Below, one piece after another: positions 2,093 through 61,500 of a DNA stretch of 64,000 bases. Position 1 is the first letter of the stretch; each line of letters opens with the position of its first letter. The DNA comes from Asterias rubens. Its lineage: Eukaryota. Position numbers and translations under genes: made by a program. The notes beneath the pieces are model-generated. The model saw only the letters and a list, made by a program, of their open reading frames with translations, ran no database searches and was not told the DNA's origin. Location: contig NC_047072.1 in the NCBI RefSeq assembly GCF_902459465.1, forward strand, positions 558,001 to 622,000. The letters are read 5' to 3'.

Positions 2093-5000
2093 CCATTATT
2101 TCTCAACGAGGTTGACGTGAAGTCGGCGAGCGAACCGGGCTCTAACGATTTCCTCTTCAACATCAACCACATCGATAAGGTGTACGCCCTCAGAGGAGAG
2201 AGTAATAACGACAAGAACCGCTGGATCGATAAGATTCAAGCCGCCTCCAAGAATTATATCGAGACAGAGAAGAAGAAACGAGAAAAAATACAGAGAGGTT
2301 GGTTCTTGACAAAATCTTCTTAAAGCCATTGGACCCTTTCGGTACAGAAAACAAATCAAAAAATCACAGATTTACAAATTATTTACAGGGTTTACAGAAG
2401 GTAGTGGTGAAAGACTTCTCTTGAAATATTAGTCCATGAAATGCTTTACTTTTTGAGAAAACGGTAAAACAATATAAATTCTCGTTAGCGAGAATTACGG
2501 ATTTGTTTTATAAACACATGTCATGACACGGCGAAACGCGCGAAAACAGAAGTGGGTTTTCCCGTTATTTTCTCCCGACTCCGATGTCCGATTGAGCCCA
2601 AATTTCCACAGGATTGTTATTTTATGTATAAGTTGTGATACACGAAGTGTGGGACTTGGACAATACTGTTTACCGAAAGTGTATAATGGCTTTAATTAAT
2701 AATAATAATACAGATTCATATAAACCCCAGACAGTTCCGCTTTTCCTATCGGTGGAGAGCATATCACGTAGGGGTTTTAATTTTAACTAAACGGCTGATA
2801 AAGAGCTGTTTGAAACCGGCTGGCTTCAGGAGTTGGGTGTGCAAGCTCATGTTTGCCAATTTTATTATTGATTTTAATTGTCATAATGGTTATAATAAAA
2901 TGGCATTTAAAGGCAGTGGACACTATTGGTAGTTGTGTCAAAGACTAGCCTTCACAGTTGGTGTATCTCAACATAAGCATAAAATAACAAACCTGTGAAA
3001 ATTTGAGCTCAATCTGTCATCGAACTTGCGACATAGTAATGAAGTTGTGTGCATTTAGATGGTTGATTTCGAGACCTCAACATGCTCAAGTTCTAAATCT
3101 GAGGTCTCGAAACCAAATTTGTGGAATATTACGTCTTTATCTAAAACATGTAAAACTATGGCACTTCAGATGGAGCCGTTTCTCACAATGTTTTATACCA
3201 TCAACCTCTCCCCATTACTTGTCACCAAGCAGTATGCCAATAAATATTTTGAGTAATTAACAATAGTGTCCACTTAAACCCTTTAAATCAAAGACCATAG
3301 CTTCATCAAGTAGCTTATACCAAGATGCTGCCGAACATGATTTTAGCTTTGACCTCTTTAAAGCAATTTGATTTGTTTTTCTGAAAATGTTTTGTTCTTG
3401 TTGTTTTTGTTGCAGCTCGTTCAATGAGAAGCAGAGGTTATGGCCGATTGTTAGTGGTCATTATGGAAGGTCATGACCTTAAACCATCAAATAATGTCAC
3501 TGGTAAGTTGAACTAAGCATTTGTGTTCTGTGAGACATGTATCTAATTTCTTTATTTTATCTGGGTAATAATGGGGTATTTCTTGCCCTGCTGTACCAAT
3601 TTTTGTGCTTTTATATTTTTGACCACACTGTTGTATTTTGTTGTTATTGCCTTTGCCACTTGTTTTCTCATCTGTCTCTTAAAGACAGTGGACATTGGTA
3701 ATCACTCAAAATAATTATTAGCATAAAACCTTTCTTGGTGACCAGTAATGTGGAGAGGTTGATGGTATAAAACATTGTGAGAAATGGCTTCCTCTGAAGT
3801 GCCATAGTTTTTGAGAGAGAAGTAATTTTCCATGAATTTGATTTCGAGACCTCAAGTTTAGAACTTGAGATCTCGAAATCAACTATCTAAACGCACACAA
3901 CTTCGTGTGACAAGGGTATTTTTTCTTTCATTATTATCTCGGAAGTTTGATGACCGATTGAGCTCAAATTTTCACAGGTTTGTTATTTAATGCATATGTT
4001 GAGATACAACAAGTGAGAAGACTGGTCTTTGACAATTACCAATAGTGTCCACTGTCTTTAAGGCCCGGTCACACACAGGCCTTGAACCCAAAATGTTAAA
4101 AATGCATGCCCTCGATTGGTTGAATAAGCATGGGCGAATTCTGCGTGGAGTAATTCAACCAATAGATTGCGTTCTCCTGGCGTCATTATCGTTATCGTTT
4201 TCATTATCGCTGCAGTGTGACTCGGCCTTTCCACCAGTTCCAGATGGGCTCTCCAGAGTCACGCTGAACTATATTCTGAAAAAAAAGTACATGAAAAGTT
4301 TTATGTCTGAAACAGTTAGGAGCGACTGGATAGGCGCTAGAAGTCGAAAGATCGACTGTTGCAGTCGTTTTGAATGACTCAGGAGCATTTTGGTTTCAGA
4401 CGTTGATCTTATCATGAGCCCCATCAGCCACTGGAAATGTTACGTTAAGTTTGCCTGTCTGAAACCAAAATTTATTTGGGTCGACCTAGAGTTGCTCTTA
4501 ATCTATTTGGTTTGGCGCAGCTCTGGTGCGCTTGTCTGGACAGGTGTATATTTTTGTTGGTGTGGCCAGAGATATCGGAATTGAAGGCTAAAGTTTTTTG
4601 GTAAATTTCTTAAATTCCGGGATTAAATGTCCCTGGATTTTGTTTAGTTTATGAATGTATTTAATGTGTGGTTTATATGCTGAATAAATAATAACAAAAA
4701 TATAAATGCACTCATGTTCACTAGTAAACTAAATGTTGTTTTATCATAAACAATCTCTCTTTAGGTCGTGCCGACCCTTACTGCGAGGTCCGTATGGGAT
4801 CCCAGGAGCATAAGACAAAAGTGGTTCCAGACACGTTAAGTCCAGTCTGGGACGCCTCTATGCAGTTCACTGTGAAAGATCTGGAACAAGATGTTTTGTG
4901 TATTACAGTGTACGACCGAGACCTCTTCTCTCCAAATGGTACAAAGCATTTTTATTTAAAAAAAAGAACAATTTTTCTTTTGGAAATCAATGAGTTATTG

Positions 5001-5711
5001 TATCAATTTCTACTCTTTTTACTCTCATCTTTCAAAGATGAGATACCAACAAGGGCAAGACTTTGACAAAAAGGAGCACAAATAAATAAAAACAGCCAGT
5101 CTTACTGGATTTAATGCTTAAAAGAACAAATGAACGTACTCATGGTGTCACTTTTGCTCATAATAACTGTATGGCGGACAAACTTTCCATAACTAGATTG
5201 TAAAAAGGGGCAAGCAGTAGAAACTGTTAATAATAAAGTTCTTACAACAGAAAAGACATCGACAATCCAGGTTGGTCAGGACTGACAAAAGTCCCTGCAC
5301 TGTCACCAAGAGGTGTGTCATTCCTACCCGCATAAGACAAAGTTCTTAAGGCCACAAACAGTTACACAACATTTAACAAAACAAACAACTGAACGAAGAA
5401 AAAACAAATTATCAAACAAACATCTCAATTAATAAATACAAACAAACAAAACCATGTGAACTAAACCAAAAGAAGCAGAAACAAAGCCACAAGACAATCA
5501 GGAAGAAACAGACAAGCTGAAAAAAAAATCCTAAACTCATAATTTTATCATTTATTCTGCAGATTTTCTTGGTCGGACTGAAGTCCGTGTGGCAGATGTC
5601 ATCAAGGAGGCTAAAGGACGTGGCCCTCTTACTAAACAGCTTTTACTTCACGAGGTTTCTACCGGCGAGGTTCATGTCAAACTAGACCTCCATCTCTTTG
5701 AGAAATCTTAA
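2093..5711 (+). CDS. ITSN1: Intersectin (long form), last four coding exons: end of PH domain plus C2 domain; the 5' part of the gene lies before the window
   Basis: GT-AG exons 2093-2297, 3416-3502, 4765-4938, 5563-5711 join in frame: PLFLNEV...[22 protein letters not shown]...[10 protein letters not shown]...[11 protein letters not shown]...[32 protein letters not shown]...[23 protein letters not shown]. This matches the remembered C-terminus of vertebrate ITSN1/2. It is probably the single invertebrate co-orthologue. Confidence 0.95.
2324..2691. mobile_element. TTAA-flanked MITE family K1 (Kolobok-like); second, oppositely oriented copy at 7889-8238
   Basis: TTAA|AGCCATT...AATGGCT|TTAA with imperfect TIRs of about 20 bp; the interior is shared in reverse complement with 7889-8238. 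Confidence 0.8.
3683..4057. mobile_element. TTAA-flanked MITE family K2, the most abundant repeat in the window
   Basis: TTAA|AG(G/A)CAGTGGACACTATTGGTAAT...ATTACCAATAGTGTCCACTG(C/T)CT|TTAA. Other full or partial copies near 2911-3283, 20099-20469, 22939-23325, 28438-28745, 34659-34810, 39603-39985, 45130-45260, 48648-49025, 52985-53200 and 57300-57456. Confidence 0.85.
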
Positions 5712-7215
5712 CGCTTGGAGAATTCTTAGAGCTACTTAAGCACAAACAGTAGCTATGAGCACAGCAAAATCATGCTTACCAGATTAAGGTCACCAGCCAA
5801 AATATCTTTTATCACATGTGCAATCTCCGACTGGTATCCTGGCAATTTTTGCTTAGCAGGTAGAGCTGTCAGGTTAAGTGTCACATCAAACTAGACCCCC
5901 ATCTTTGTTGACTAGTGTCCAATTTCATAGAGCTGCTTAAGCACAAACAGTAGCTACAAGCACAACAAAATCATGCTTATGAAGGTCACCAGCCAAAATG
6001 TCTTTGCCACATGTGCAATCTCCAAATGGTATCCTGCTTATTTTTGCTTAGCAGAAAGTTATTAAGCAATATTTCCTGATTAAGCAGCTCTATAAAATTT
6101 GGGCCAAGTAGAGATAGAACCTGATTGTTCAGCTTAATCACTTTCAACATGCGGTGCTCATGACGTACCAAAGCTAGTGTTGTGCAACTAGGTTAAATTT
6201 GCTAACCATTCTTATGAAACATGTGAAAAACTTACGTGCAGTCTTTTGAATACGCATTTGTGGGGACTTGCGTTTGTTTTGTTATTCGCTTTTCTCAAGA
6301 ATAATTCCCTTGTGGACACCAAAATGAACAAAGAAAAAACTTCTAATTTCACAATTAAAATGAAATCTTCTATTTTATTCTGTGTTCCCCCCCTGCCTTT
6401 ATATTTCAACAGAATAATTTTAAAGCATAATATAAATTTAACTTTGTATCAAAAAGATGAAATTGTGAAAAATGAGAGAGCAAAAACATTGTAAAAAGAT
6501 ATTTGAAAGGTTTATGAACTTGAAACTATATATAATAATGAATAACTTTAACAGACCATTCCGTTTTTTATTCCCCTTCCACAAAAACAAAAAACATTAA
6601 ATGTGATATAACTTATGATCTTTTTGTGAGTGGAGATTGCTTTTTTCGGTTTGTAATAAAACAAAATATAAGCATTAAATTATTTTCAGTACATTTTTGT
6701 TCACTTGGAACTTGTCTTGGTAGTTTCAGGTACTGCAAACAATTTGAGAAACTGTTTGAAAATATTTATCAAAACTACCCAAAGCTGAGACCATAAAGTA
6801 TTAAAAGGTGATGATATTAATGGTTAGTTTAAGACCCACGTTAAGTGCAGTTTTAAACCACAGCTGATCGAATCTGAGAATTTAATTGCTATTGAATTGC
6901 CTGATTGGGATCTGCTAACTCTTACAATTTATAGCTAAACACATTTCTTTACTGATGGGTTTTTATAATTGCATTCTTGCCAATGTTTACTCATACTACA
7001 CATTCATGTATGGGTGGCTTAAGTTACTATTTTTTTTAGTAGAGTGCCCAAAACAACTTTTTGCAAATTCAGGACTAAAGTTTAAGGGAAAGATGTTGTA
7101 GCTTGGATGGTGGGTGGTAAATGCCCCAGTTCAGGTATTTAATTAAACGTGGATCCTTACCTTAATATCTTTCCCCCTTTTTTCTATAAACGGGTGTATT
7201 TGTTTGTACGTGTTT

Positions 7216-7259
7216 ATGCCTCTGAAGAAGGTCCGGTTTGGATCGAAAGCTAAGGCCAT
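7216..7259 (+). ncRNA. Minimal type-I hammerhead ribozyme motif (Penelope-type), intact core
   Basis: atgcct-CTGAAGA-a-GGTCC(ggttt)GGATC-GAAA-GC-TA-aggccat: stem I, CUGANGA, one extra base, 5-bp stem II, GAAA, palindromic AGCU in place of stem III, and a CUA cleavage triplet. Confidence 0.7.
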
Positions 7260-8708
7260 CTACCCTACTCATTATAAATATTTAAAGGATATACTAATTG
7301 TTACCCACTTATCCCAATTTGGGTATACTTCTACCCAGATGAGGATATCAATTGCCCCCAGTTGGGAGACCCCGGGTGACAAAGACACCTACTAAAATAC
7401 TAACAATTAACGATCCCTGTACACCAAAAAATAGTGTCAGAAAACTAATTTTTTCTAGCCAATTTGAAAATGACAAATTAATTTATATTAATCATGAGTA
7501 TTTTATTGGACCAAAACTATGTGCTTATAGTTTATAGTTTGTGCATAAAATAAAGTGTTAACTTTGTTTTGGGGTAAAGCTTGTTGGCTTTTGGGAGGAA
7601 GGAAATTCCGAGCTTAAGTACCATGTAACATTTGTTCACAAAAAGGATGACCTTGTACAATCCAGGGCCTTTTTGGTAGGCAAGATACATTTTATGTCTT
7701 CATTTCCACTGAAATAAAGAGATATTAAAGTAACAACTGGACACGTTTTGAGATGTACCCCTGCGATTTCTTCTTGTCAGAAATTGACAACAATCTAAAT
7801 ACTGATTGTTGTCTTTCATAGAGCTGTGTACAAATCGTGCCTGCAGGAAGTTAAGTCTCTTGGGCTATTTTCGAGTATGTGATGTTAAAGCCATTGGACC
7901 CTTTCAGTAAACAGTATTGTCCAAGGCCCACACTTCGTGTATCACAACTTCTATATCAAATAACAAACCTGTGAAAATTTGGGCTTAATCGGTCATCGGA
8001 GTTGGGAGAAAACCCACCCTTGTATCCGCGCATTTCGCCGTGTCATGTGTTTAAAATAAATCCGTAATTCTCGTTAACGAGAATTTATATTGTTTTGCTG
8101 TTTTCTCAAAAAGTAAAGCATTTCATGGAATAATATTTCAAGAGAAGTCTTTCACCATTGCCTTCTGTAAACCCTGTAAGTTATTTGTAAATCTGTGAAC
8201 TTTTTTTTTCTTTTCTGTACCAAAAGGGTCCAATGGCTTTAAAGATTTTCCATATTACAGAAAAGAATACATTTGGTAGTCACTCTTAAAATTAATGGCA
8301 ATATACTTACTTGGTTAAAAGTAAAGCAGCTTTTGGTAGTATGAAGCAATTTGAAAATCATTTTACTTAGAAGCATAATGTGGTTATGTGGAAAAACATA
8401 TCAGTTTTTATCCCCCAAACTTTGAGTGTGAGAAACTTTTGCTGTCAAAGCTAAAACCCAAGTTGCTTGTGAAGATAGCATTGTTGGATGGTTGGTGGCA
8501 AGTTATCACATGCGAATCCAGTAAGTGTGGGTACAAAGTTGTGGCTACTCATGCAAAACATTTGTACAAACACTTTTTTAAAGACATTTAAAAAAAAACT
8601 TGTTCTTGTTTCTTCAACAAGAACTACACGTACTACAGTACATTCTCTGTGGTCCTCTAACACTTTACTTGTGAGTGATGGCTCAAAGTAATGATGCGTC
8701 ACACTTAA

Positions 8709-9564: not shown

Positions 9565-10345
9565 CACCTTGTCGAGCGGATAAGAACACTGAGCTCAAGC
9601 TCTGATGTTTCTGATCAGCAGAGTGTGGGTTCGAGTCCCAGTCATGACACTTGTGTCCTAAAGCAAGACACTTTATTGCTGCATCCTTTGGATGGGACCT
9701 AAAGCCGTTGGTCCTGTGTGTTAGGAATGTATGTAAAAGAACCCAGTGCACTTATCGTAAAAAGAAGGCGTCCCCCCCGGTGTTCCTGGTTTCAAGAGGG
9801 TGGGTTCAAGTCCCAGTCATGACACTTGTGTCCTAAAGCAAGATACTTTATTGCTGCATCCTTTGGATGGGACCTAAAGCCATTGGTCCTGTGTGTTGGG
9901 AATGTATGTAAAAGAACCCAGTGCACTAATCGTAAAAAGAAGGCTTTCCCCCGGTGTTCCTGGTTTCAAAAGAGTGGGTTCAAGTCCCAGTCATGACGCT
10001 TGTGTCCTAAAGCAAAACACTTTATGGCTGCATCCTTTGGATGGGACCTAATGCCGTTGGTCCTGTGTGTTAGGAATGTATGTAAAAGAACCCAGTGCAC
10101 TTATCGTAAAAAGAAGGCTTTCCCCCCGGTGTTCCTGGTTTCAAGAGGGTGGGTTCAAGTCTCAGTCATGACGCTTGTGTCCTAAAGCAAAACACTTTAT
10201 GGCTGCATCCTTTGGATGGGACCTAAAGCCGTTGGTCCTGTGTGTTGGGAATAAATGTAAAAAGAAGGCGTTCCCCCCGGTGTTCCTGGTTTGATTGGCT
10301 GCATATTGCGCCACAGCACCTTGTTATTACCATCACATGGTGCTT
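9565..10345 (+). mobile_element. tRNA-derived SINE with an internal 175-bp segment amplified four times
   Basis: Box A-like tgtcgagcggataag, box B ggttcgagtcc, core gtgtcctaaagcaagacactt; units start near 9627, 9801, 9975 and 10150. Confidence 0.8.
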
Positions 10346-11038
10346 TGTAACAAAAGAAAACCCTGACAATGCCCCTGTCTGACCAGTGGGAAAAAAAAGG
10401 AGACCTCCAGCTGGACGGCCGTTTAACGAGCAGGATTAGATCTCTTTGCACAGAACCCGTGGAGACAAAAATTGTGAATATACACGTTTTCATGTACCGT
10501 TTGTGGTGTTTCACTGAAACATCATGGCATATTTTAACATTTTTTGTGACTTTCCGGTCACTAGCGGTGGTTCAAAATTTGGGTATTAGCACACGAGGGT
10601 GGTTGGTATTCAATTGTTCTTTCTGTGTTATATCCATACGACATACGACACCATAGTTGAGTGAAGAACCAAGTGTGCACGCGCAAAGTCACATACGCCA
10701 GGTCGCCCATTGTCTGTATAACTAATGTGGGTGATTACGAGGCGTCGTAAAACACCGCGGTACCACGAGTTTTGAAGTCCCTTCGTTCGAGCCCCTTCTC
10801 TTCCTTCCGCCATGGTCCAACCATGCTAGCTGGTGCGTCTTGAGCAAGACTACCCCTAGGAGTGAGTCTACAAGACAAAGCCTTACACCTTCTGACTTCT
10901 TCAATCCTCGATCCTAAACTGAAATCTGTAGTTATGATTCGAACCCACAAACTTGTGGTTTCAAATGTCGCAGTATCGAATACATTTGTGTCTAGTGTGT
11001 ACATTCGCTCATAGACAAATCTTTATGTATCTTGTTTT

Positions 11039-11080
11039 ATGCCTCTGAAGAAGGTCCGGTTTGGATCGAAAGCCAAGGCC
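11039..11080 (+). ncRNA. Second copy of the same hammerhead motif, U16.1 changed to C (probably impaired)
   Basis: Near-identical to 7216-7259, but GAAAGCCA replaces GAAAGCTA (position 11074). Confidence 0.55.
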
Positions 11081-12150
11081 ACCTACCCTATTCATTATAT
11101 CATTTTATGTATTTTTAAAGATATTAAAAATTTCAGACAAATGAAAATGACACAATGTGAACTGGATAAATTCAAATCACAAAAACAATCATATTTATTT
11201 GGATTTATTGTAATAGTAGAACAATCTGTTGAACAGTGAGTCTGTCTGCATCTGAAACTGTTATGGGTATTTTGTGTCAAGGAAGAAACAATACCGTGAA
11301 GACATTACAAAGCCTGGTTAAGAGTTGACACAGTTGAACTTGATACAATTTCACAGATACTGCTTGACAAATTTCTTTGCTAAGCAGAAATGTGTGTGCT
11401 ACCAAGCGTTATGGCCCTGCTGCCAAGTAAAACTGTCTTCTCAATTGAAGGTTACTTATAACTGTCTGATAAATTCTGAAATCCATGAAATTAAATACAC
11501 ACTCCAAACTCAATCATGCACCTTTTAAAGAATTTGTTTTCAAGATATGTCATCACCAACAGGCTGATAAATTCAATGCCCAGATGTCAGTCGGGCCCAA
11601 TTTCACAGAACTTGTTATTAACAACTTCCTGCTTAGCAGAAATGAGTAGGATATCAGTCACAAATGGTATATTTGACAGTGTTTTATAGCTGATAACCAT
11701 ATTCTGGTAAGCAACATTTTGTTCTGTTTAGCTTACTCTTTGTGCTTAAGCAGCTCTATGAAACTAGGCCCAGGTTGATGTTAGGCGACACTTCAATCTT
11801 CTTTGTGTCCAGGGAAAACAACCAAAGTATAGATTTTTTAAAACTGTCAAAGCCCCACCTGAAAAATCTGACATTTGTCCATTAACAAGTTTTTCTGATG
11901 ACACTATTTATGGAGTAATCCCTTAGTTATTATCCCAATCAACTTTATTCATACTTCTCATAAGATCCGACTCGGTGAATTCTTTAAACTCTATTTAAAA
12001 AAACTCTCTTCCTACAATAATATCGACAAATGCAACATGGTCAGATATCCTTCAAACTCGGCCCAAACTTAATGCATGAGAACACTGGGTACTAGACTAA
12101 AACATCTTGTCCGCACAAACTAAAACAGAATCTGTATCATTACTATGCAA

Positions 12151-50700: not shown

Positions 50701-53700
50701 TTATATCTTTCAGTGAGTCCAACCTGAAAATTGCTTCATGGAATGTGGCTGGATTAAGAGCTTGGATAAAGGTAGGGATTAGTTCACTTTTATCCCATCA
50801 ATACGAACAAGTTCAAAAGTGTATTTCTGGTTCACATAACAAGCACCCTAGTTTACAAGTTTCCTCAGGCTGGCAAGCTACAGTGTAAGAGTAGGGGTTA
50901 ACCCCAGTGTTTCTGGTTCACATATCAAGCACCTATGTTTACAGGTTTCCTCAGGCTTGCAAGCTACAGTGTAAGGGTAGGGTTTACCCCTGGTGTTTCT
51001 GGTTCACATAGCAAGCACCCTAGTTTACAAGTTTCCTCAGGCTGGCAAGCTACAGTGTAAGAGTAGGGTTACCCCTGGTGTTTCTGGTTCACATAGCAAG
51101 CACCTATGTTTACAGGTTTCCTCAGGCTTGCAAGCTACAGTGAAAGAGTAGGGTTTACCCCTGGTGTTTCTGGTTCACATAGCAAGCACCTATGTTTACA
51201 GGTTTCCTCAGGCTTGCAAGCTACAGTGAAAGAGTAGGGTTTACCCCTGGTGTTTCTGGTTCACATAGCAAGCACCCTTGTTTACAGGTTTCCTCAGGCT
51301 TGCAAGCTACAGCGAAAGAGTAGGGTTTACCCCTGGTGTTTCTGGTTCACATAGCAAGCACCTATGTTTACAGGTTTCCTCAGGCTTGCAAGCTACAGTG
51401 AAAGAGTAGGGTTTACCCCTGGTGTTTCTGGTTCACATAGCAAGCACCTATGTTTACAGGTTTCCTCAGGCTTGCAAGCTACAGTGAAAGAGTAGGGTTT
51501 AACCCTGGTGTTGCTGGTTCACATAGCAAGCACCCTAGTTTACAGGTTTCCTCAGGCTTGCAAGCTACAGTGTAAGAGTAGGGTTTACCCCTGGTGGTTT
51601 CTGGTTCACATAGCAAGCACCTATGTTTACAGGTTTCCTCAGGCTTGCAAGCTACAGTGAAAGAGTAGGGTTTAACCCTGGTGTTTCTGGTTCACATAGC
51701 AAGCACCCTTGTTTACAGGTTTCCTCAGGCTTGCAAGCTACAGCGAAAGAGTAGGGTTTACCCCTGGTGTTTCTGGTTCACATAGCAAGCACCCTTGTTT
51801 ACAGGTTTCCTCAGGCTTGCAAGCTACAGTGAAAGAGTAGGGTTTACCCCTGGTGGTTTCTGGTTCACATAGCAAGCACCCTAGTTTACAAGTTTCCTCA
51901 GGCTTGCAAGCTACAGTGAAAGAGTAGGGGTTAACCCCAGTGTTTCTGGTTCACATAGCAAGCACCCTAGTTTACAGGTTTCCTCAGGTTGCGTGCAACA
52001 GTGGTTCAGTTCACTTTTGAAATCTTTAATATCAATGATCAGTCTTGTAGCTAGTACGGTGGGTGGTGCCGGATGGACATGCCCAGAGCTAAATATTTCG
52101 CCCAGCACTCTGAGCAAATTACACTGTGCCGCCCAGTACAGATTTCCCCCAGAATGCATTTCATCAATGTTGGCCCCCATTATTAAACCTTAATAATTTT
52201 AATAGATGTTTAACTTGCATCGGGGATAAAGAATGATAATTTTGGTTTAACCCTTACACCAATGTGGTATACTCAGTACTTTCCCCGGTCCTGTAAAAGA
52301 AATCACAGGCATATTACTCGGGTGGGATTTGAACCCATGACCCTTGCAATTCTAGAGCAGTCTCTTACCAACTAGACCACCCAGACTAAGAATGCCCGGT
52401 AGCTAGAGGCAGTTCGAAGCCTCTGATTCAAGAGGGTATTTAGTATAACACACAATGGTATAAGGGTAAAACTAAAATATATCATAAAAAAATTGTGTTG
52501 ATCTGCTAGCCCTTGGTGGATTTAGAGCCCACCACTTAAGTTAGTCTAGCTACAATAATGTCACTGATTTTATTTTGCGTTTTACATACAATTTGTTTTT
52601 GTTTACTTATTCAGAAAGATGGAATCTCCTACATCGCTAAGGAAGATCCCGATATCTTTTTTGTGATGGAAACGAAATGTGCCGACGATGCCATCCCTGA
52701 GGTGACTAAAGTAGAAGGGTACCATACATACTGGCATGGTGCTGCCGTTAAGAAAGGCTACTCAGGAACTGGAATGTTTACAAAGAAAGAACCAATAAGC
52801 GTCAAATACGGAATAGGTGAGTGTAAGAGACTGTCAACCAACCGATCAATCGATCAATAAAGCAATTGAACATGTGGCGTGTCATGGCCAAGTGGATAAA
52901 AGCTCCGTATTCAAGCTCTGGTGTCTCTGTACTGCAGAGTGTGTGTTCAAGTCCCAATCGTGAGTCTGACACTTCATGTCCTTAAAGGCACTGGACACCT
53001 TTTATAATTGTCAAAGACCTCAGCTGAGGTCTCAAATTCAGTTCAAATGTTTTAGTTAGAAATATCCTCTTTCTCAAAAACTTACGTTACCTCAGAGGGA
53101 GCAGTTTCTCACAATGTTTTATACTATCCCCAGCTCTCTATTGCTTGTTACCAAGTAAGTTTTTTATGCTAAACATTATTTTGAGTAATTACCAATTACT
53201 GCAAATATTATTACCTGGTGAGGTGCTGTAGTTTTTTGAGAAATTAGTAAAACAATGTCATGAAAACAAATTTCGTTTCAGTGATCATGAGACGCAAATT
53301 ATTTTAGCATGAACAATTTTTTTGTTCAAAACCTCAGCAACTAATAATTTAAGGTACGCTTTTTACTATCAATATCTTCAAACGGTGTAAGTTTAATGTA
53401 AATTTGTGGACATTGTGTTTTGTGTTACAAAAAGTTTCCCTTTGGTTTATAACAAAAACTGGTTTATGATAAAAACTTGGACCTTGTAATGTAGTTTTAC
53501 CTAGTTGTATTTGTTAGATGGATTTTGAGATTTATCTGTTGACCCCCCAGGTATTGAAGAACACGACGGTGAAGGTAGGGTCATCACTGCCGAGTTTGAG
53601 GACTTCTATTTTGTCGGCTGCTGTGAGTGACTTTCCATTCCATTCTCATTGCAAAGTTTTTTCTTTTTAAATATTTGTTTCAACATTAACCCTCTTACGT

Positions 53701-58595: not shown

Positions 58596-61500
58596 TAATC
58601 AGAAAACATTTACATAGTGCCAAATATGAAATCAATTCCAATTTGCTTGTTGAAAAACTTATAACATTTTGAGGACGAGGACATTAAAGGAACACGTTGC
58701 CTTGGACCGGTCGAGTTGGTCTTTGAAAAGCATTTGTAACCGTCTGTTATAAAATGCATATGGTTGGAAAGATGTTTTAAAAGTAGAATACAATGATCCA
58801 CACAAATACGCCTCGAAATTGCGTGATTTTCCTTTTACCTCGTCGACTAACACGGTTTTGACTGCCATAAATGGCCGACCGTTTTAGTTCGTAAAGTAAT
58901 TGTTCGCGAAGTAGATGTTTTTTTCTTGCACACTTTTACTTTGTTTTAAACTGAAATGCTCACCTGTAAGAACAGTGATGCAAATACCAACAGGCCAAGG
59001 AGGAGAATATTCTGCTGCATCCATAAGACGAAGGAGTCTATACAGCCATGGATGAAGATGGTGGAGTAGATCATATAGCGCTAGAAAAGATATCAATATT
59101 AAGTGTCATGAGTGATGTACAAATCTTAAAGGGTCTGGGTACTTTTTGTAGGACACAAAGCACAATGTCCACAGATTTCTATTAAACTTGCACAATAATG
59201 ATAGTATAAAGATTACCTAAAAAACATTACTTGCTGAGGTGATGTAGTTTTTTAGAAATTAGTAATGTTAATTTGGTGACATTGTGTTTTGTGTTACAAA
59301 AGGTACACCATGAGAGAGTCAGTCTCTATGGTCAAATTCAATAGGAGACTTTCCAACGCTAGGTGGCAGCAGACATACCGGGTAAATTTCCATTGTTTAC
59401 GTAGTTCTGAACATGCGCATAATTCTGAGAACAATGGATTTGCCCGGTAAGTCTGCTGCCCTCTATCGTCCCAGAAAGTCTCCCATTCAAAGATCCACTC
59501 GTTCTCAAAAGAGTCCTTGTGAAAATCAGAAAAAAGTTAACAAGTTTCTAAGAAAAAAAGTTATAAATAACAGCAAACTTGAAAAAGCTCTGAAAAGAGC
59601 CGGTTTGGTATCGACGTTTCGAACAGTATACTCTGCTCGTCTTCAGGAGAGAGCCTCTAACAAGTGTACTCTAACCGGACCTTTAAAATGACATTGTGTT
59701 TGATACCCTTTCAAGTGCAATTACTTCCGTCAATCAAAATCTTTTTGAGACGTCACATATTTTTTTTTTTTTTTGCGCGGTCCGCTCGTCAGCAAACTGT
59801 TCGTGTATAATGCTGCCAATCATTATTGCTTGCTTTGCAATGCAACTAAAATACCATTATTCTGTGATCTTTTTAATGCTTAACGTAGAAAATTCCAAAT
59901 GTTTTCATATTTTGTCTTCCGCATGTTTAAAAACATAACGTTCGGAGCTCGTAACGAAGTTTCGGCCAAAATGAATAAACGGTGACGACATGAAAAGATT
60001 TTTTTTTATAAAACTCCACATGGTGTCTGGTAACTTTTTTGATTAATACAAATACATGAATTGAAGAAAGACAGCAACTATAAATAAATGAATAAACAAA
60101 TACTTCTTCACTTTGCAAAAAAAGGAAGAAAGCAAAGAAATCCATAGACATGTTTTCCTGTGACTGGTAAATATTTTAATTTTTTTTCTACACTCCTTTC
60201 CTTAAAAGATAATGAAAACAAAATAAAAAGCTGCGTCCTATTTATTTAGCAAAAAAAATGTATAATACCGTTTGCGTTCTGATGTCCAATCCACACTGGT
60301 AGTTCATGGCCCAATCGATGCAGCATGAGTACGGGACACCACACGCTTCACGGCCCGGGGACGAACAGTCGAAGTAAGCGTTCATCTGCCAGTCGGCATA
60401 ACTTGATGCGCCACAGCATCGAAACTATATCAACACACTTGTTACATTTAACAATTATATAGGTATAGGCTACTTACTCCTGTATACATCATAGAGCTGC
60501 TAAGCACAACAATTTGCTTAGCATGAAATTTCTTCCTTGATAAAATCAGGATTACCAATCAAATTTCCTTGTGATTTTCAGGATAAGCAAACAACAGCTC
60601 AATACCAGTAACAAGCAATATGCAGCAAATGGAAATTTGGTTGGTAATCCTGTTTTTATCAAGGAAGAAATTTAATGCTAAGCAAAATGTTGTGCTTAGC
60701 AGCTCTATGAAATTGGGCCCAGTTGTATGCCTATGTAGGCTACTTATTCATGTATAAATTGAACCCATGATACTTCCAAATAGTAGATTTTTGACTGAAT
60801 TTGAGTCTGAATTATAGTCGGCAAAACATCCTAACGGAAACATCACACCAACTTGGGTAACTTGGTTTGCATGCAGGCCGCAGAGGGTGGCTGTATGTGT
60901 CAGAAATATCATATCGAAGTCTTATATAGCGCACGTATCCACCAAACAAGAAAGTCAGACTAGTATCTTCCTTCAGACATTTAAATGCTAACTTTATTTG
61001 AGAAGCTCGCGCCTTATTTTTGAAATAGATATTATGGCGCCATAAAAATACTGCGAATCGTCATCATCATCATCATACAACTCGGCCATTCCAGTAAACC
61101 CACGTTGCTCACGGGTGCGTTCGTTTAGCTTCCCCCTGTGTCTACCGAACGACTCGCCGAACGACTCGCCGAACGACTCGCCGACTCTACCGAACGACTC
61201 GCCGACTCGCCGCTCTCGTAGTGACACTGGGGCCAGCCCCCAAGTGACCCACTCCACAAGCAGGGCACTAAGGGGCTGACGGGTGAGCCCCTGGAATGAC
61301 GTCAAAGCTAGGCGAACGCACCAGGGAAGACCGGGGTCGACCCAGGAAAGCTAAACGAACGCACCCTATAATGTACTCTCTTTTCGCGCCCAAACTTTCG
61401 TCTTCAAATATCAGTCTGTAAGATGGTATCACCCTCAAGGAGCCTGCCAAGAGCAGAATGCACTGCCGTCCTAACTTTTTAGGAAAAACAGTTTGGACGT

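What the first reader, a model, noticed from the sequence alone, without database searches (positions are those of the whole stretch)
7216..7259. Intact-core minimal hammerhead ribozyme in sense orientation 1.5 kb after the intersectin stop
Seen: every conserved hammerhead element is present in order. Stem I is atgcct/aggccat, followed by C3-U4-G5-A6-A7-G8-A9 (7222-7228), one extra A, stem II GGUCC/GGAUC, G12-A13-A14-A15.1 (7245-7248), then G-C-U16.1-A17, with predicted cleavage after 7252. Stem III is replaced by the palindrome AGCU. Established: Penelope-like retroelements carry such minimal hammerheads, which cleave as dimers through the palindrome, and an extra base between A9 and G10.1 is tolerated in a viroid hammerhead. 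Inference: AATAAA signals occur both before it (6655) and after it (7489, 7713), so a long ITSN 3' UTR isoform could carry a self-cleaving, dimer-gated module. No ORF annotation would show this.
Basis: partly seen in the sequence, partly recalled or inferred. Interest (0 to 1): 0.8.

Follow-up and report, generated by a model that had tools for sequence, protein, structure and literature searches.

The report
Penelope retroelement tail with minimal hammerhead
The 44-base ribozyme-like motif is real, but it is the tail of a truncated Penelope-like jumping gene, one of at least 843 near-identical copies in this genome, and nothing shows that it cuts the intersectin messenger RNA in whose transcribed 3' region it sits.

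Summary
Window 7216-7259 (+) holds every hammerhead core element in order, one extra A after A9, a G10.1-C11.1-closed stem II, and the palindrome AGCU in place of stem III.

It is not a chance motif and not specific to intersectin. It lies in a 127-nt, 5'-truncated fragment (7150-7276) of a 4.45-kb Penelope-like element. The parent ORF has reverse transcriptase and C-terminal GIY-YIG domains. The genome holds 843 copies within 2 mismatches of the 36-nt core, and a decayed copy sits at 11026-11099.

Related elements at 40-54% protein identity carry the same motif, found in a sea cucumber, a tick, a mussel and marine metagenomes. They show compensatory changes in stems I and II and in the palindrome (AGCU/ACGU/AUAU). 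This matches the published "min-HHR" of Penelope elements.

No Rfam model scores it. RNA-derived contigs that contain the spliced gene also cover both sides of the motif out to at least 7850, so it probably sits in a long 3' UTR.

Cleavage is untested. Published min-HHRs cleave poorly even as dimers. The scan has already found such tails elsewhere in this genome. Verdict: an ordinary retroelement relic, of low interest.

The parts
7150..7276 (+). 5'-truncated fragment of a Penelope-like element: the last ~127 nt of its 3' UTR, the hammerhead and the tail
   Evidence: blastn gives 88.9% identity to L033:8983-9126, the 3' end of a copy with an RT+GIY-YIG ORF. 30 genomic copies share the same 3' end (...CTACCCTAYTCATTATA) and have variable 5' truncation points.
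7216..7259 (+). minimal type-I hammerhead motif (min-HHR)
   Evidence: Sequence read; covariation with related elements.
7222..7229 (+). core C3-U4-G5-A6-A7-G8-A9 plus an unpaired A before G10.1
   Evidence: Columns T8 to G15 are invariant in 8 sequences from 5 lineages, except N7.
7230..7244 (+). stem-loop II (GGUCC / GGUUU / GGAUC); G10.1-C11.1 is the closing pair
   Evidence: Paired in 100% of cells; 3 of 5 pairs show changes on both sides.
7245..7252 (+). G12-A13-A14, the palindrome A15.1-G-C-U16.1 (helix III only in a dimer), and A17; predicted cleavage between 7252 and 7253
   Evidence: The palindrome reads AGCU, ACGU or AUAU in relatives, and position 17 is A, U or C.
7253..7276 (+). 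3' strand of stem I (7253-7259) and the element's terminal tail, which ends at CATTATA
   Evidence: Homology among copies stops here and AT-rich or unique flanks follow.
11026..11099 (+). second, shorter truncated copy of the same element tail; the hammerhead at 11039-11082 has U16.1 changed to C (AGCC)
5562..5711 (+). last coding exon of the intersectin-like gene; stop codon at 5709-5711
   Evidence: ORF listed. Spliced contigs join 4937 to 5562 in runs X1, X2 and X7. C2 domain found in the preceding exon.

Best explanation
The motif is the minimal, dimer-dependent hammerhead that a canonical Penelope-like retroelement (PLE: RT + C-terminal GIY-YIG endonuclease, 4.45-kb unit) carries about 60 to 20 nt before its 3' end. 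The window copy is a 127-nt, 5'-truncated insertion. It landed in sense orientation about 1.4 kb downstream of the intersectin stop codon, in DNA that is transcribed.

In the parent element the motif is kept by selection. Full copies are preceded by a partial upstream copy (pLTR) that ends in the same hammerhead. Two hammerheads on one long transcript could then pair through the AGCU palindrome, with stem I formed in trans, and release unit-length RNA. This step is inferred from the literature and is not shown here.

In the intersectin 3' UTR the solo copy is most likely an inert passenger. As a monomer it has no helix III, and its only cis neighbour is mutated. Any cleavage would need a trans partner and probably the element's own protein.
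For: - Copy number: the 36-nt core occurs 843 times at <=2 mismatches, control 0, with >=1350 first-look candidates.
- Insertion signature: copies share one 3' end and differ in 5' truncation point.
- Parent ORF: L033 has a 930-aa ORF with RVT_1 (E 5.9e-11) and GIY-YIG (E 3.3e-5). L035 has a 908-aa ORF with 2106 homologues carrying RVT_1, DUF8422, HTH_animal and GIY-YIG.
- pLTR layout: hammerheads at L035:4679 and 9130, 4451 nt apart, lie in 1789-nt direct repeats that are 99.94% identical. The junction from tail to 5' UTR to ORF is present in >=8 loci.
- Homologous motifs occur next to PLE ORFs of 40-54% identity from Tara metagenomes, Apostichopus, Ornithodoros and Mytilus.
- Covariation: 97.7% of cells paired, 8 of 11 pairs changed on both sides, 0 of 500 shuffles as good, and slid registers collapse. 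Stem I and the palindrome were not part of my search filter.
- All four published min-HHR hallmarks are present: a nucleotide between 9 and 10.1, G10.1-C11.1, palindromic 15.x/16.x, and many solo copies (PMC4209133).
- Transcription: in runs that hold the spliced 4937|5562 junction, contigs tile 5562-7240 and 7247-7850. The intron is empty, or in X7 carries only one low-depth contig.
Against: - No Rfam hammerhead model reports it, although those models expect a stem III hairpin.
- Self-cleavage was not tested.
- ViennaRNA puts the active double-hammerhead fold at -22.5 kcal/mol. Two separate monomers give -25.2, and an inactive extended duplex gives -32.1.
- The contigs give no strand, no RNA ends and no continuity across 7240-7247. 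The 'RNA' label of the runs is the tool's guess, supported only by the spliced contig.
- The short copies could come from a non-autonomous derivative of the element rather than from the autonomous element itself.
Confidence: 0.9

Rival explanations
1. Exapted 3'-UTR ribozyme: the solo hammerhead is retained in the intersectin mRNA and cleaves it. It would do so in trans-dimers with other transcripts that carry the same motif, or with the copy at 11039. This would tune the stability of the long-UTR isoform, as the discontinuous CLEC2 3'-UTR hammerhead of rodents does.
For: - Sense orientation inside transcribed sequence downstream of the stop.
- The core is 100% identical to the family's commonest form over 36 nt.
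- The upstream 63 nt of the fragment are only about 87% identical to other copies.
- The insertion is shared with a second, related organism: X3 contig 7081-7245 bridges the flank and the element.
Against: - The contrast in identity is biased, because the comparison copies were selected by similarity to the hammerhead-plus-tail query. It also holds among copies in general (0.90 against 0.95). It therefore reflects selection on master elements, not on this locus.
- There are 843+ identical motifs elsewhere.
- The cis partner has lost U16.1.
- Published min-HHRs cleave poorly even as dimers (PMC4209133). No RNA-seq ends were seen at the Anolis PLE hammerhead site (PMC11167929).
- Contigs lie on both sides of the site in all three RNA-type runs.
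Confidence: 0.05
2. The copy derives from a short non-autonomous element (retrozyme- or SINE-like) that borrows the Penelope tail, not from a truncated autonomous element.
For: - Most copies sampled are short, <600 nt.
- A 258-nt tandem array of hammerhead + tail + start of the 5' UTR exists at L047:1150-1990.
- A 2026 preprint argues that animal retrozymes are non-autonomous PLE derivatives (doi 10.64898/2026.07.22.740005).
Against: - 5' ends are scattered rather than fixed, as expected for truncation.
- The window fragment is colinear with the 3' UTR of the autonomous copy.
- No distinct short-element head was seen.
Confidence: 0.05
3. Chance resemblance: a core-like string with fortuitous flanking complementarity.
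For: A relaxed descriptor hits about 4 times per shuffled 64-kb window. The single-sequence fold z-score is only -1.18. There is no Rfam hit.
Against: 843 copies, a PLE parent, and cross-phylum conservation with compensatory changes.
Confidence: 0.005

Closest known systems
Minimal hammerheads (min-HHR) of metazoan Penelope-like elements (Cervera & De la Pena 2014, PMC4209133; Lunse, Weinberg & Breaker, RNA Biol 14:1499, seen only as reference 134 of PMC6765202)
   Same: Type I topology; no stem III hairpin, with a 4-nt palindrome at 15.x/16.x instead; an unpaired nucleotide between A9 and G10.1; a G10.1-C11.1 pair; location in the terminal repeat of an RT+GIY-YIG element; hundreds to thousands of solo copies from truncated insertions.
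   Different: Nothing of kind. This family's helix II is 5-6 bp, against 7-8 bp in the Schistosoma families. The motif sits 548 nt after the ORF stop and ends 17 nt before the element's end (cleavage site 24 nt before the end). This particular copy lies in a gene's transcribed 3' region.
Anolis carolinensis Poseidon (PAc) hammerhead (PMC11167929)
   Same: A PLE-borne hammerhead. The 30-40 bp 'tail' concept matches the 24 nt that follow the cleavage site here.
   Different: In PAc the hammerhead overlaps the ORF start, cleaves only with the element's protein, and is dispensable for insertion in vitro. None of this was tested here.
Canonical type I hammerheads and animal non-LTR retrozymes (Rfam Hammerhead_1 RF00163; PMC7229834)
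   Same: The same catalytic core. Dimer-dependent cleavage through a short palindromic helix III. Tandem arrays exist for this family too (L047).
   Different: Canonical forms have a 1-2 bp stem III with a loop, and loop-loop tertiary contacts. The window motif has neither and does not score with the Rfam models.
Discontinuous 3'-UTR hammerhead of rodent CLEC2 genes (Martick et al. 2008, cited in PMC4209133)
   Same: A hammerhead in sense orientation in a 3' UTR.
   Different: The CLEC2 ribozyme is a complete, efficient monomer conserved at orthologous loci. This one is a solo half of a dimeric ribozyme and a member of a dispersed repeat.

Membership tests
PLE minimal hammerhead (min-HHR) | Conserved core C3 U4 G5 A6 N7 G8 A9 ... 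G12 A13 A14 A15.1 ... U16.1 H17, in type I order | tested here: met
   The core columns are invariant across 8 sequences except N7 and H17; one U3 variant occurs in Mytilus.
PLE minimal hammerhead (min-HHR) | [quoted passage not shown] | tested here: met
   A at 7229, invariant in all relatives. The feature is listed in PMC4209133.
PLE minimal hammerhead (min-HHR) | G10.1-C11.1 closing pair of helix II | tested here: met
   Pair 15-29 is GC in 8 of 8 sequences.
PLE minimal hammerhead (min-HHR) | Helix III absent or 1 bp; positions 15.x/16.x palindromic, so that two copies form helix III | tested here: met
   AGCU here; ACGU and AUAU in relatives, so the inner pair covaries as CG, GC and UA.
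PLE minimal hammerhead (min-HHR) | Lies in the terminal repeat (pLTR) of an element encoding RT + GIY-YIG | tested here: met
PLE minimal hammerhead (min-HHR) | Self-cleavage 3' of H17 as a dimer | not testable with these tools
   Only a thermodynamic estimate was made: double-hammerhead -22.5 kcal/mol against -32.1 for an inactive duplex.
Rfam hammerhead families (Hammerhead_1/3/II/HH9/HH10) | Scores with the covariance model | tested here: not met
   No hit at E<=10 on 3 kb or on 101 nt, and none at gathering score on the window.
Penelope-like element, canonical EN+ type (parent of the fragment) | Single ORF with RT followed by a C-terminal GIY-YIG domain, direct terminal repeats, 5'-truncated copies | tested here: met
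   RVT_1 at residues 443-594 and GIY-YIG at 835-917 of 930 aa; 1789-nt direct repeats; variable truncation points.
Regulatory 3'-UTR ribozyme of a host gene | RNA ends at the cleavage site, and locus-specific conservation beyond neutral expectation | tested here: inconclusive
   Contigs cannot show RNA ends. The insertion is shared with a related organism, but its core sequence there could not be read.

The most novel reading that the evidence does not exclude
The solo Penelope hammerhead has been co-opted in the long intersectin 3' UTR. It would cleave only when it pairs in trans with other RNAs bearing the same palindrome and stem I, for example transcripts of active Penelope copies. Intersectin long-isoform levels would then be coupled to retroelement expression.
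Probability: 0.04. Interest if true: 0.6.

Novelty: new member of a known kind. Interest (0 to 1): 0.15.

Why it matters
It matters little as a discovery. Minimal hammerheads in Penelope-like element tails, and their thousands of solo copies in animal genomes, have been described since 2014, and this scan has already met them elsewhere in the same genome.

Three points are useful:
- A clean parent element (4.45-kb unit, RT + GIY-YIG) is now tied to this hammerhead family.
- Cross-phylum covariation of the intermolecular palindrome (AGCU, ACGU, AUAU) supports the dimer model without a bench experiment.
- There is a concrete case of such a motif in sense orientation in the transcribed 3' region of a conserved gene. 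It could serve as a natural test of whether solo min-HHRs ever cleave in vivo.

Tried and rejected
- **Rfam.** Searches of 3 kb and of 101 nt at E<=10, and of the whole window at gathering score, found no hammerhead.
- **Single-sequence folding.** The z-score of -1.18 is uninformative.
- **L033.** A copy 5'-truncated just upstream of the ORF start, with no upstream repeat, so L035 was used to show the repeat structure.
- **P0016 (L039), P0028 (L041, Branchiostoma), P0086 (L044).** My descriptor found no convincing min-HHR within the fetched flanks. This is not evidence of absence.
- **Read laying.** It returned contigs only. It gave no strand, no RNA ends and no bridging of 7240-7247, so cleavage in vivo and poly(A) site use could not be assessed.
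- **Identity of the hammerhead against upstream sequence at this locus.** This was meant as a test of local constraint. I rejected it as biased by how the copies were sampled.
- **Other repeats in the window.** The CTGACGA...GAAAAC repeats (19315, 26156, 32034, 36400, 40574) and the 86-bp satellite (50815-51987) matched the loose string pattern. They fail a descriptor that requires a helix II adjacent to the core.
- **Lunse et al. 2017 (PMC5785218).** The paper is not held in the library, so I cite it only through PMC6765202.
- **The search of earlier findings by place.** It returned nothing near the finding.

Full report
**1.
Window 7216-7259 (+) reads ATGCCT-CTGAAGA-A-GGTCC-GGTTT-GGATC-GAA-AGCT-A-AGGCCAT.
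- C3-A9 at 7222-7228, and the extra A at 7229.
- Stem-loop II at 7230-7244, and G12-A14 at 7245-7247.
- A15.1-G-C-U16.1 at 7248-7251, and A17 at 7252.

Stem I is 4 contiguous pairs, and longer if one C is bulged. The upstream gene is intersectin-like and on the + strand:
- PH_13 domain at 2117-2323 and C2 domain at 4794-4940.
- Last exon 5562-5711, with the stop codon at 5709-5711.

The motif is therefore in sense orientation, 1505 nt after the stop. Two details fail. No AATAAA exists at 7489; the sites are 6655, 7549, 7713 and 8055. No Rfam hammerhead model reports the motif even under permissive settings.

**2. It is a repeat, not a singular feature.**
- A 64-nt stretch (7213-7276) recurs at 11036-11099 at 95% identity.
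- In the window's own 417.6-Mb genome, the 36-nt core occurs 843 times at <=2 mismatches. The reversed control gives 0.
- An 81-nt query raised >=1350 first-look candidates.
- Thirty sampled copies all end at the same point, ...CTACCCTAYTCATTATA, followed by AT-rich or unique sequence.
- The same copies begin at scattered upstream points. This is the signature of 5'-truncated retroelement insertions.
- By that measure the window fragment spans 7150-7276.

**3. The parent is a Penelope-like element (PLE).**
- A long copy (L033) has a 930-aa ORF with RVT_1 at residues 443-594 and GIY-YIG at 835-917.
- In L035 a 908-aa ORF (5856-8582) is flanked by two 1789-nt direct repeats that are 99.94% identical. 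Each ends in the hammerhead, at 4679 and 9130, which are 4451 nt apart.
- The junction from tail through the 1.07-kb 5' UTR to the ORF start recurs in at least 8 loci at 98-100% identity. The upstream partial copy is therefore a regular part of full insertions. This is the classical pLTR-ORF-pLTR layout.
- The ORF has 2106 scored homologues with RVT_1, DUF8422, HTH_animal and GIY-YIG. They include proteins from echinoderms, amphioxus, a newt, ticks and a mussel.

**4. The motif is under selection in the element lineage.**
I fetched contigs encoding homologues of 40-54% protein identity. A homologous motif lies beside the ORFs from Tara Oceans metagenomes, Apostichopus japonicus, Ornithodoros turicata and Mytilus edulis.

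In an ungapped 44-column alignment, the core, the extra A, G10.1-C11.1 and GAA-A are invariant. Variation falls where a hammerhead allows it:
- N7 is A, U or C.
- H17 is A, U or C.
- Loop II varies.

For the structure as named, 97.7% of cells are paired and 8 of 11 pairs change on both sides. None of 500 shuffles reaches this, and sliding the register collapses the pairing.

One caveat applies. My filter required the core, GAA and a helix II of at least 4 bp, so helix II pairing is partly ascertained. Stem I and the palindrome were not filtered:
- All 4 stem I pairs change on both sides.
- The palindrome reads AGCU, ACGU or AUAU.

The palindrome's covariation is the expected signature of an intermolecular helix III. 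It is independent support for the dimer model.

**5. Comparison with what is known.**
Cervera & De la Pena (PMC4209133) defined exactly this class. Their "min-HHRs" are type I and sit in the pLTRs of metazoan PLEs. Their listed hallmarks are:
- No stem III, or a 1-bp stem III, with palindromic 15.x/16.x positions.
- A conserved G10.1-C11.1 pair.
- Thousands of mostly solo copies per genome.
- Little or no activity as monomers, and low activity as dimers.

All sequence hallmarks are met here. A later study of an Anolis PLE found that its hammerhead cleaved only with the element's protein. That hammerhead was dispensable for insertion in vitro, and no RNA-seq ends lay at its cleavage site (PMC11167929). 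The review PMC6765202 summarises the dimer evidence, including Lunse et al., which I could not read. The failure of the Rfam models is explained by the missing stem III hairpin and the extra nucleotide.

**6. Transcription at the locus.**
Four public runs were laid on 4600-8600.
- In X1, X2 and X7, one contig joins 4937 directly to 5562. These runs therefore contain spliced cDNA of this gene.
- The intron carries no contig in X1 and X2, and only one low-depth contig in X7.
- Contigs tile 5562 onward to 7240, then 7247-7850 (7250-7817 in X7). Further contigs reach the end of the stretch at 8600: from 8239 in X1 and X2, and from 8429 in X7.
- Sequence on both sides of the motif is thus present in RNA-type assemblies. 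This is consistent with a 3' UTR of at least 2.1 kb.

The break between 7240 and 7247 is not evidence of cleavage. It lies 30 nt inside each edge of the high-copy 7213-7276 block, which is what a 31-mer assembly graph produces at a repeat (inference). Contigs give neither strand nor RNA ends, and the tool labels the runs' RNA status as a guess.

A run of a second, related organism (X3) has a contig at 7081-7245 that bridges the unique flank and the element. The insertion therefore predates that divergence.

**7. How it most likely works.**
- *Shown:* the sequence anatomy, the PLE parentage, the copy number, the covariation, and the presence of the locus in transcribed sequence.
- *Inferred for the parent element:* two hammerheads on one read-through transcript form a domain-swapped double hammerhead. 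Helix III would be AGCU:AGCU, with stem I formed in trans. Each would then cleave after H17 and release unit-length RNA.
- *Inferred for the window copy:* it is a passenger.
  - As a monomer it cannot form helix III.
  - The only same-strand neighbour (11039-11082) carries U16.1-to-C.
  - The active dimer fold is predicted to be less stable than the alternatives: -22.5 kcal/mol, against -25.2 for two monomers and -32.1 for an extended duplex.

I put about 5% on any physiological cleavage of the intersectin mRNA.

**8. Verdict.**
The gene-regulatory reading is unsupported. It is a new member of a known kind and of low interest. The scan's earlier notes report the same class of Penelope tails elsewhere in this genome, which they describe as a sea star.

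Noticed in passing
window 59609-59652 (-), hairpin at 59587-59601 (-): A second, different min-HHR family: CTGAAGA-C-GAGCAG/CTGTTC-GAA-ACGT-C. It has 1144 copies at <=3 mismatches in the genome. 11 nt downstream lies a hairpin, GGCTCTTTTCAGAGC, that resembles the histone mRNA 3' stem-loop.
   Followed up: partly
L047:1150-1990 (G000:C8:13302149-13302989): A 258-nt tandem repeat of 3.3 units at 98% identity. It carries four same-strand hammerheads of the window's family. Each unit holds the hammerhead, the tail and the first ~160 nt of the PLE 5' UTR. This is a retrozyme-like array in which cis dimers could form.
   Followed up: partly
window 11026-11099 (+): A second truncated tail of the same PLE family, 3.8 kb downstream on the same strand. 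Its hammerhead has U16.1-to-C (AGCC), so it is a decayed copy.
   Followed up: yes
window 50815-51987: An 86-bp satellite of about 14 units whose minus strand contains CTGAGGA...GAAAC. It does not fit a hammerhead descriptor, because no helix II is adjacent to the core.
   Followed up: partly
window 19315, 26156, 32034 (+); 36400, 40574 (-): Five copies of a dispersed repeat containing CTGACGACA(C/A)AGTTGGA(A/T)GCGTCTCCAAG(T/C)GAAAACCCC. The hairpin is not adjacent to the core-like string, so it is not hammerhead-like by the descriptor.
   Followed up: partly
window 5720-6120 and 7885-8240: Two very high-copy repeats inside the presumed 3' UTR. The first has inverted-repeat arms (5902-5943 / 6077-6118). 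Summed contig depth in the RNA-type runs is 10^3 to 10^6, with many alternative joints.
   Followed up: no
window 9606-10292: A tandem repeat of about 174 bp, roughly 4 units.
   Followed up: no
L043:8375-8418 (Mytilus edulis): A PLE-associated min-HHR with U3 in place of C3 while G8 is kept, and an AUAU palindrome. It is either a variant core or a decayed copy.
   Followed up: no
   Followed up: no
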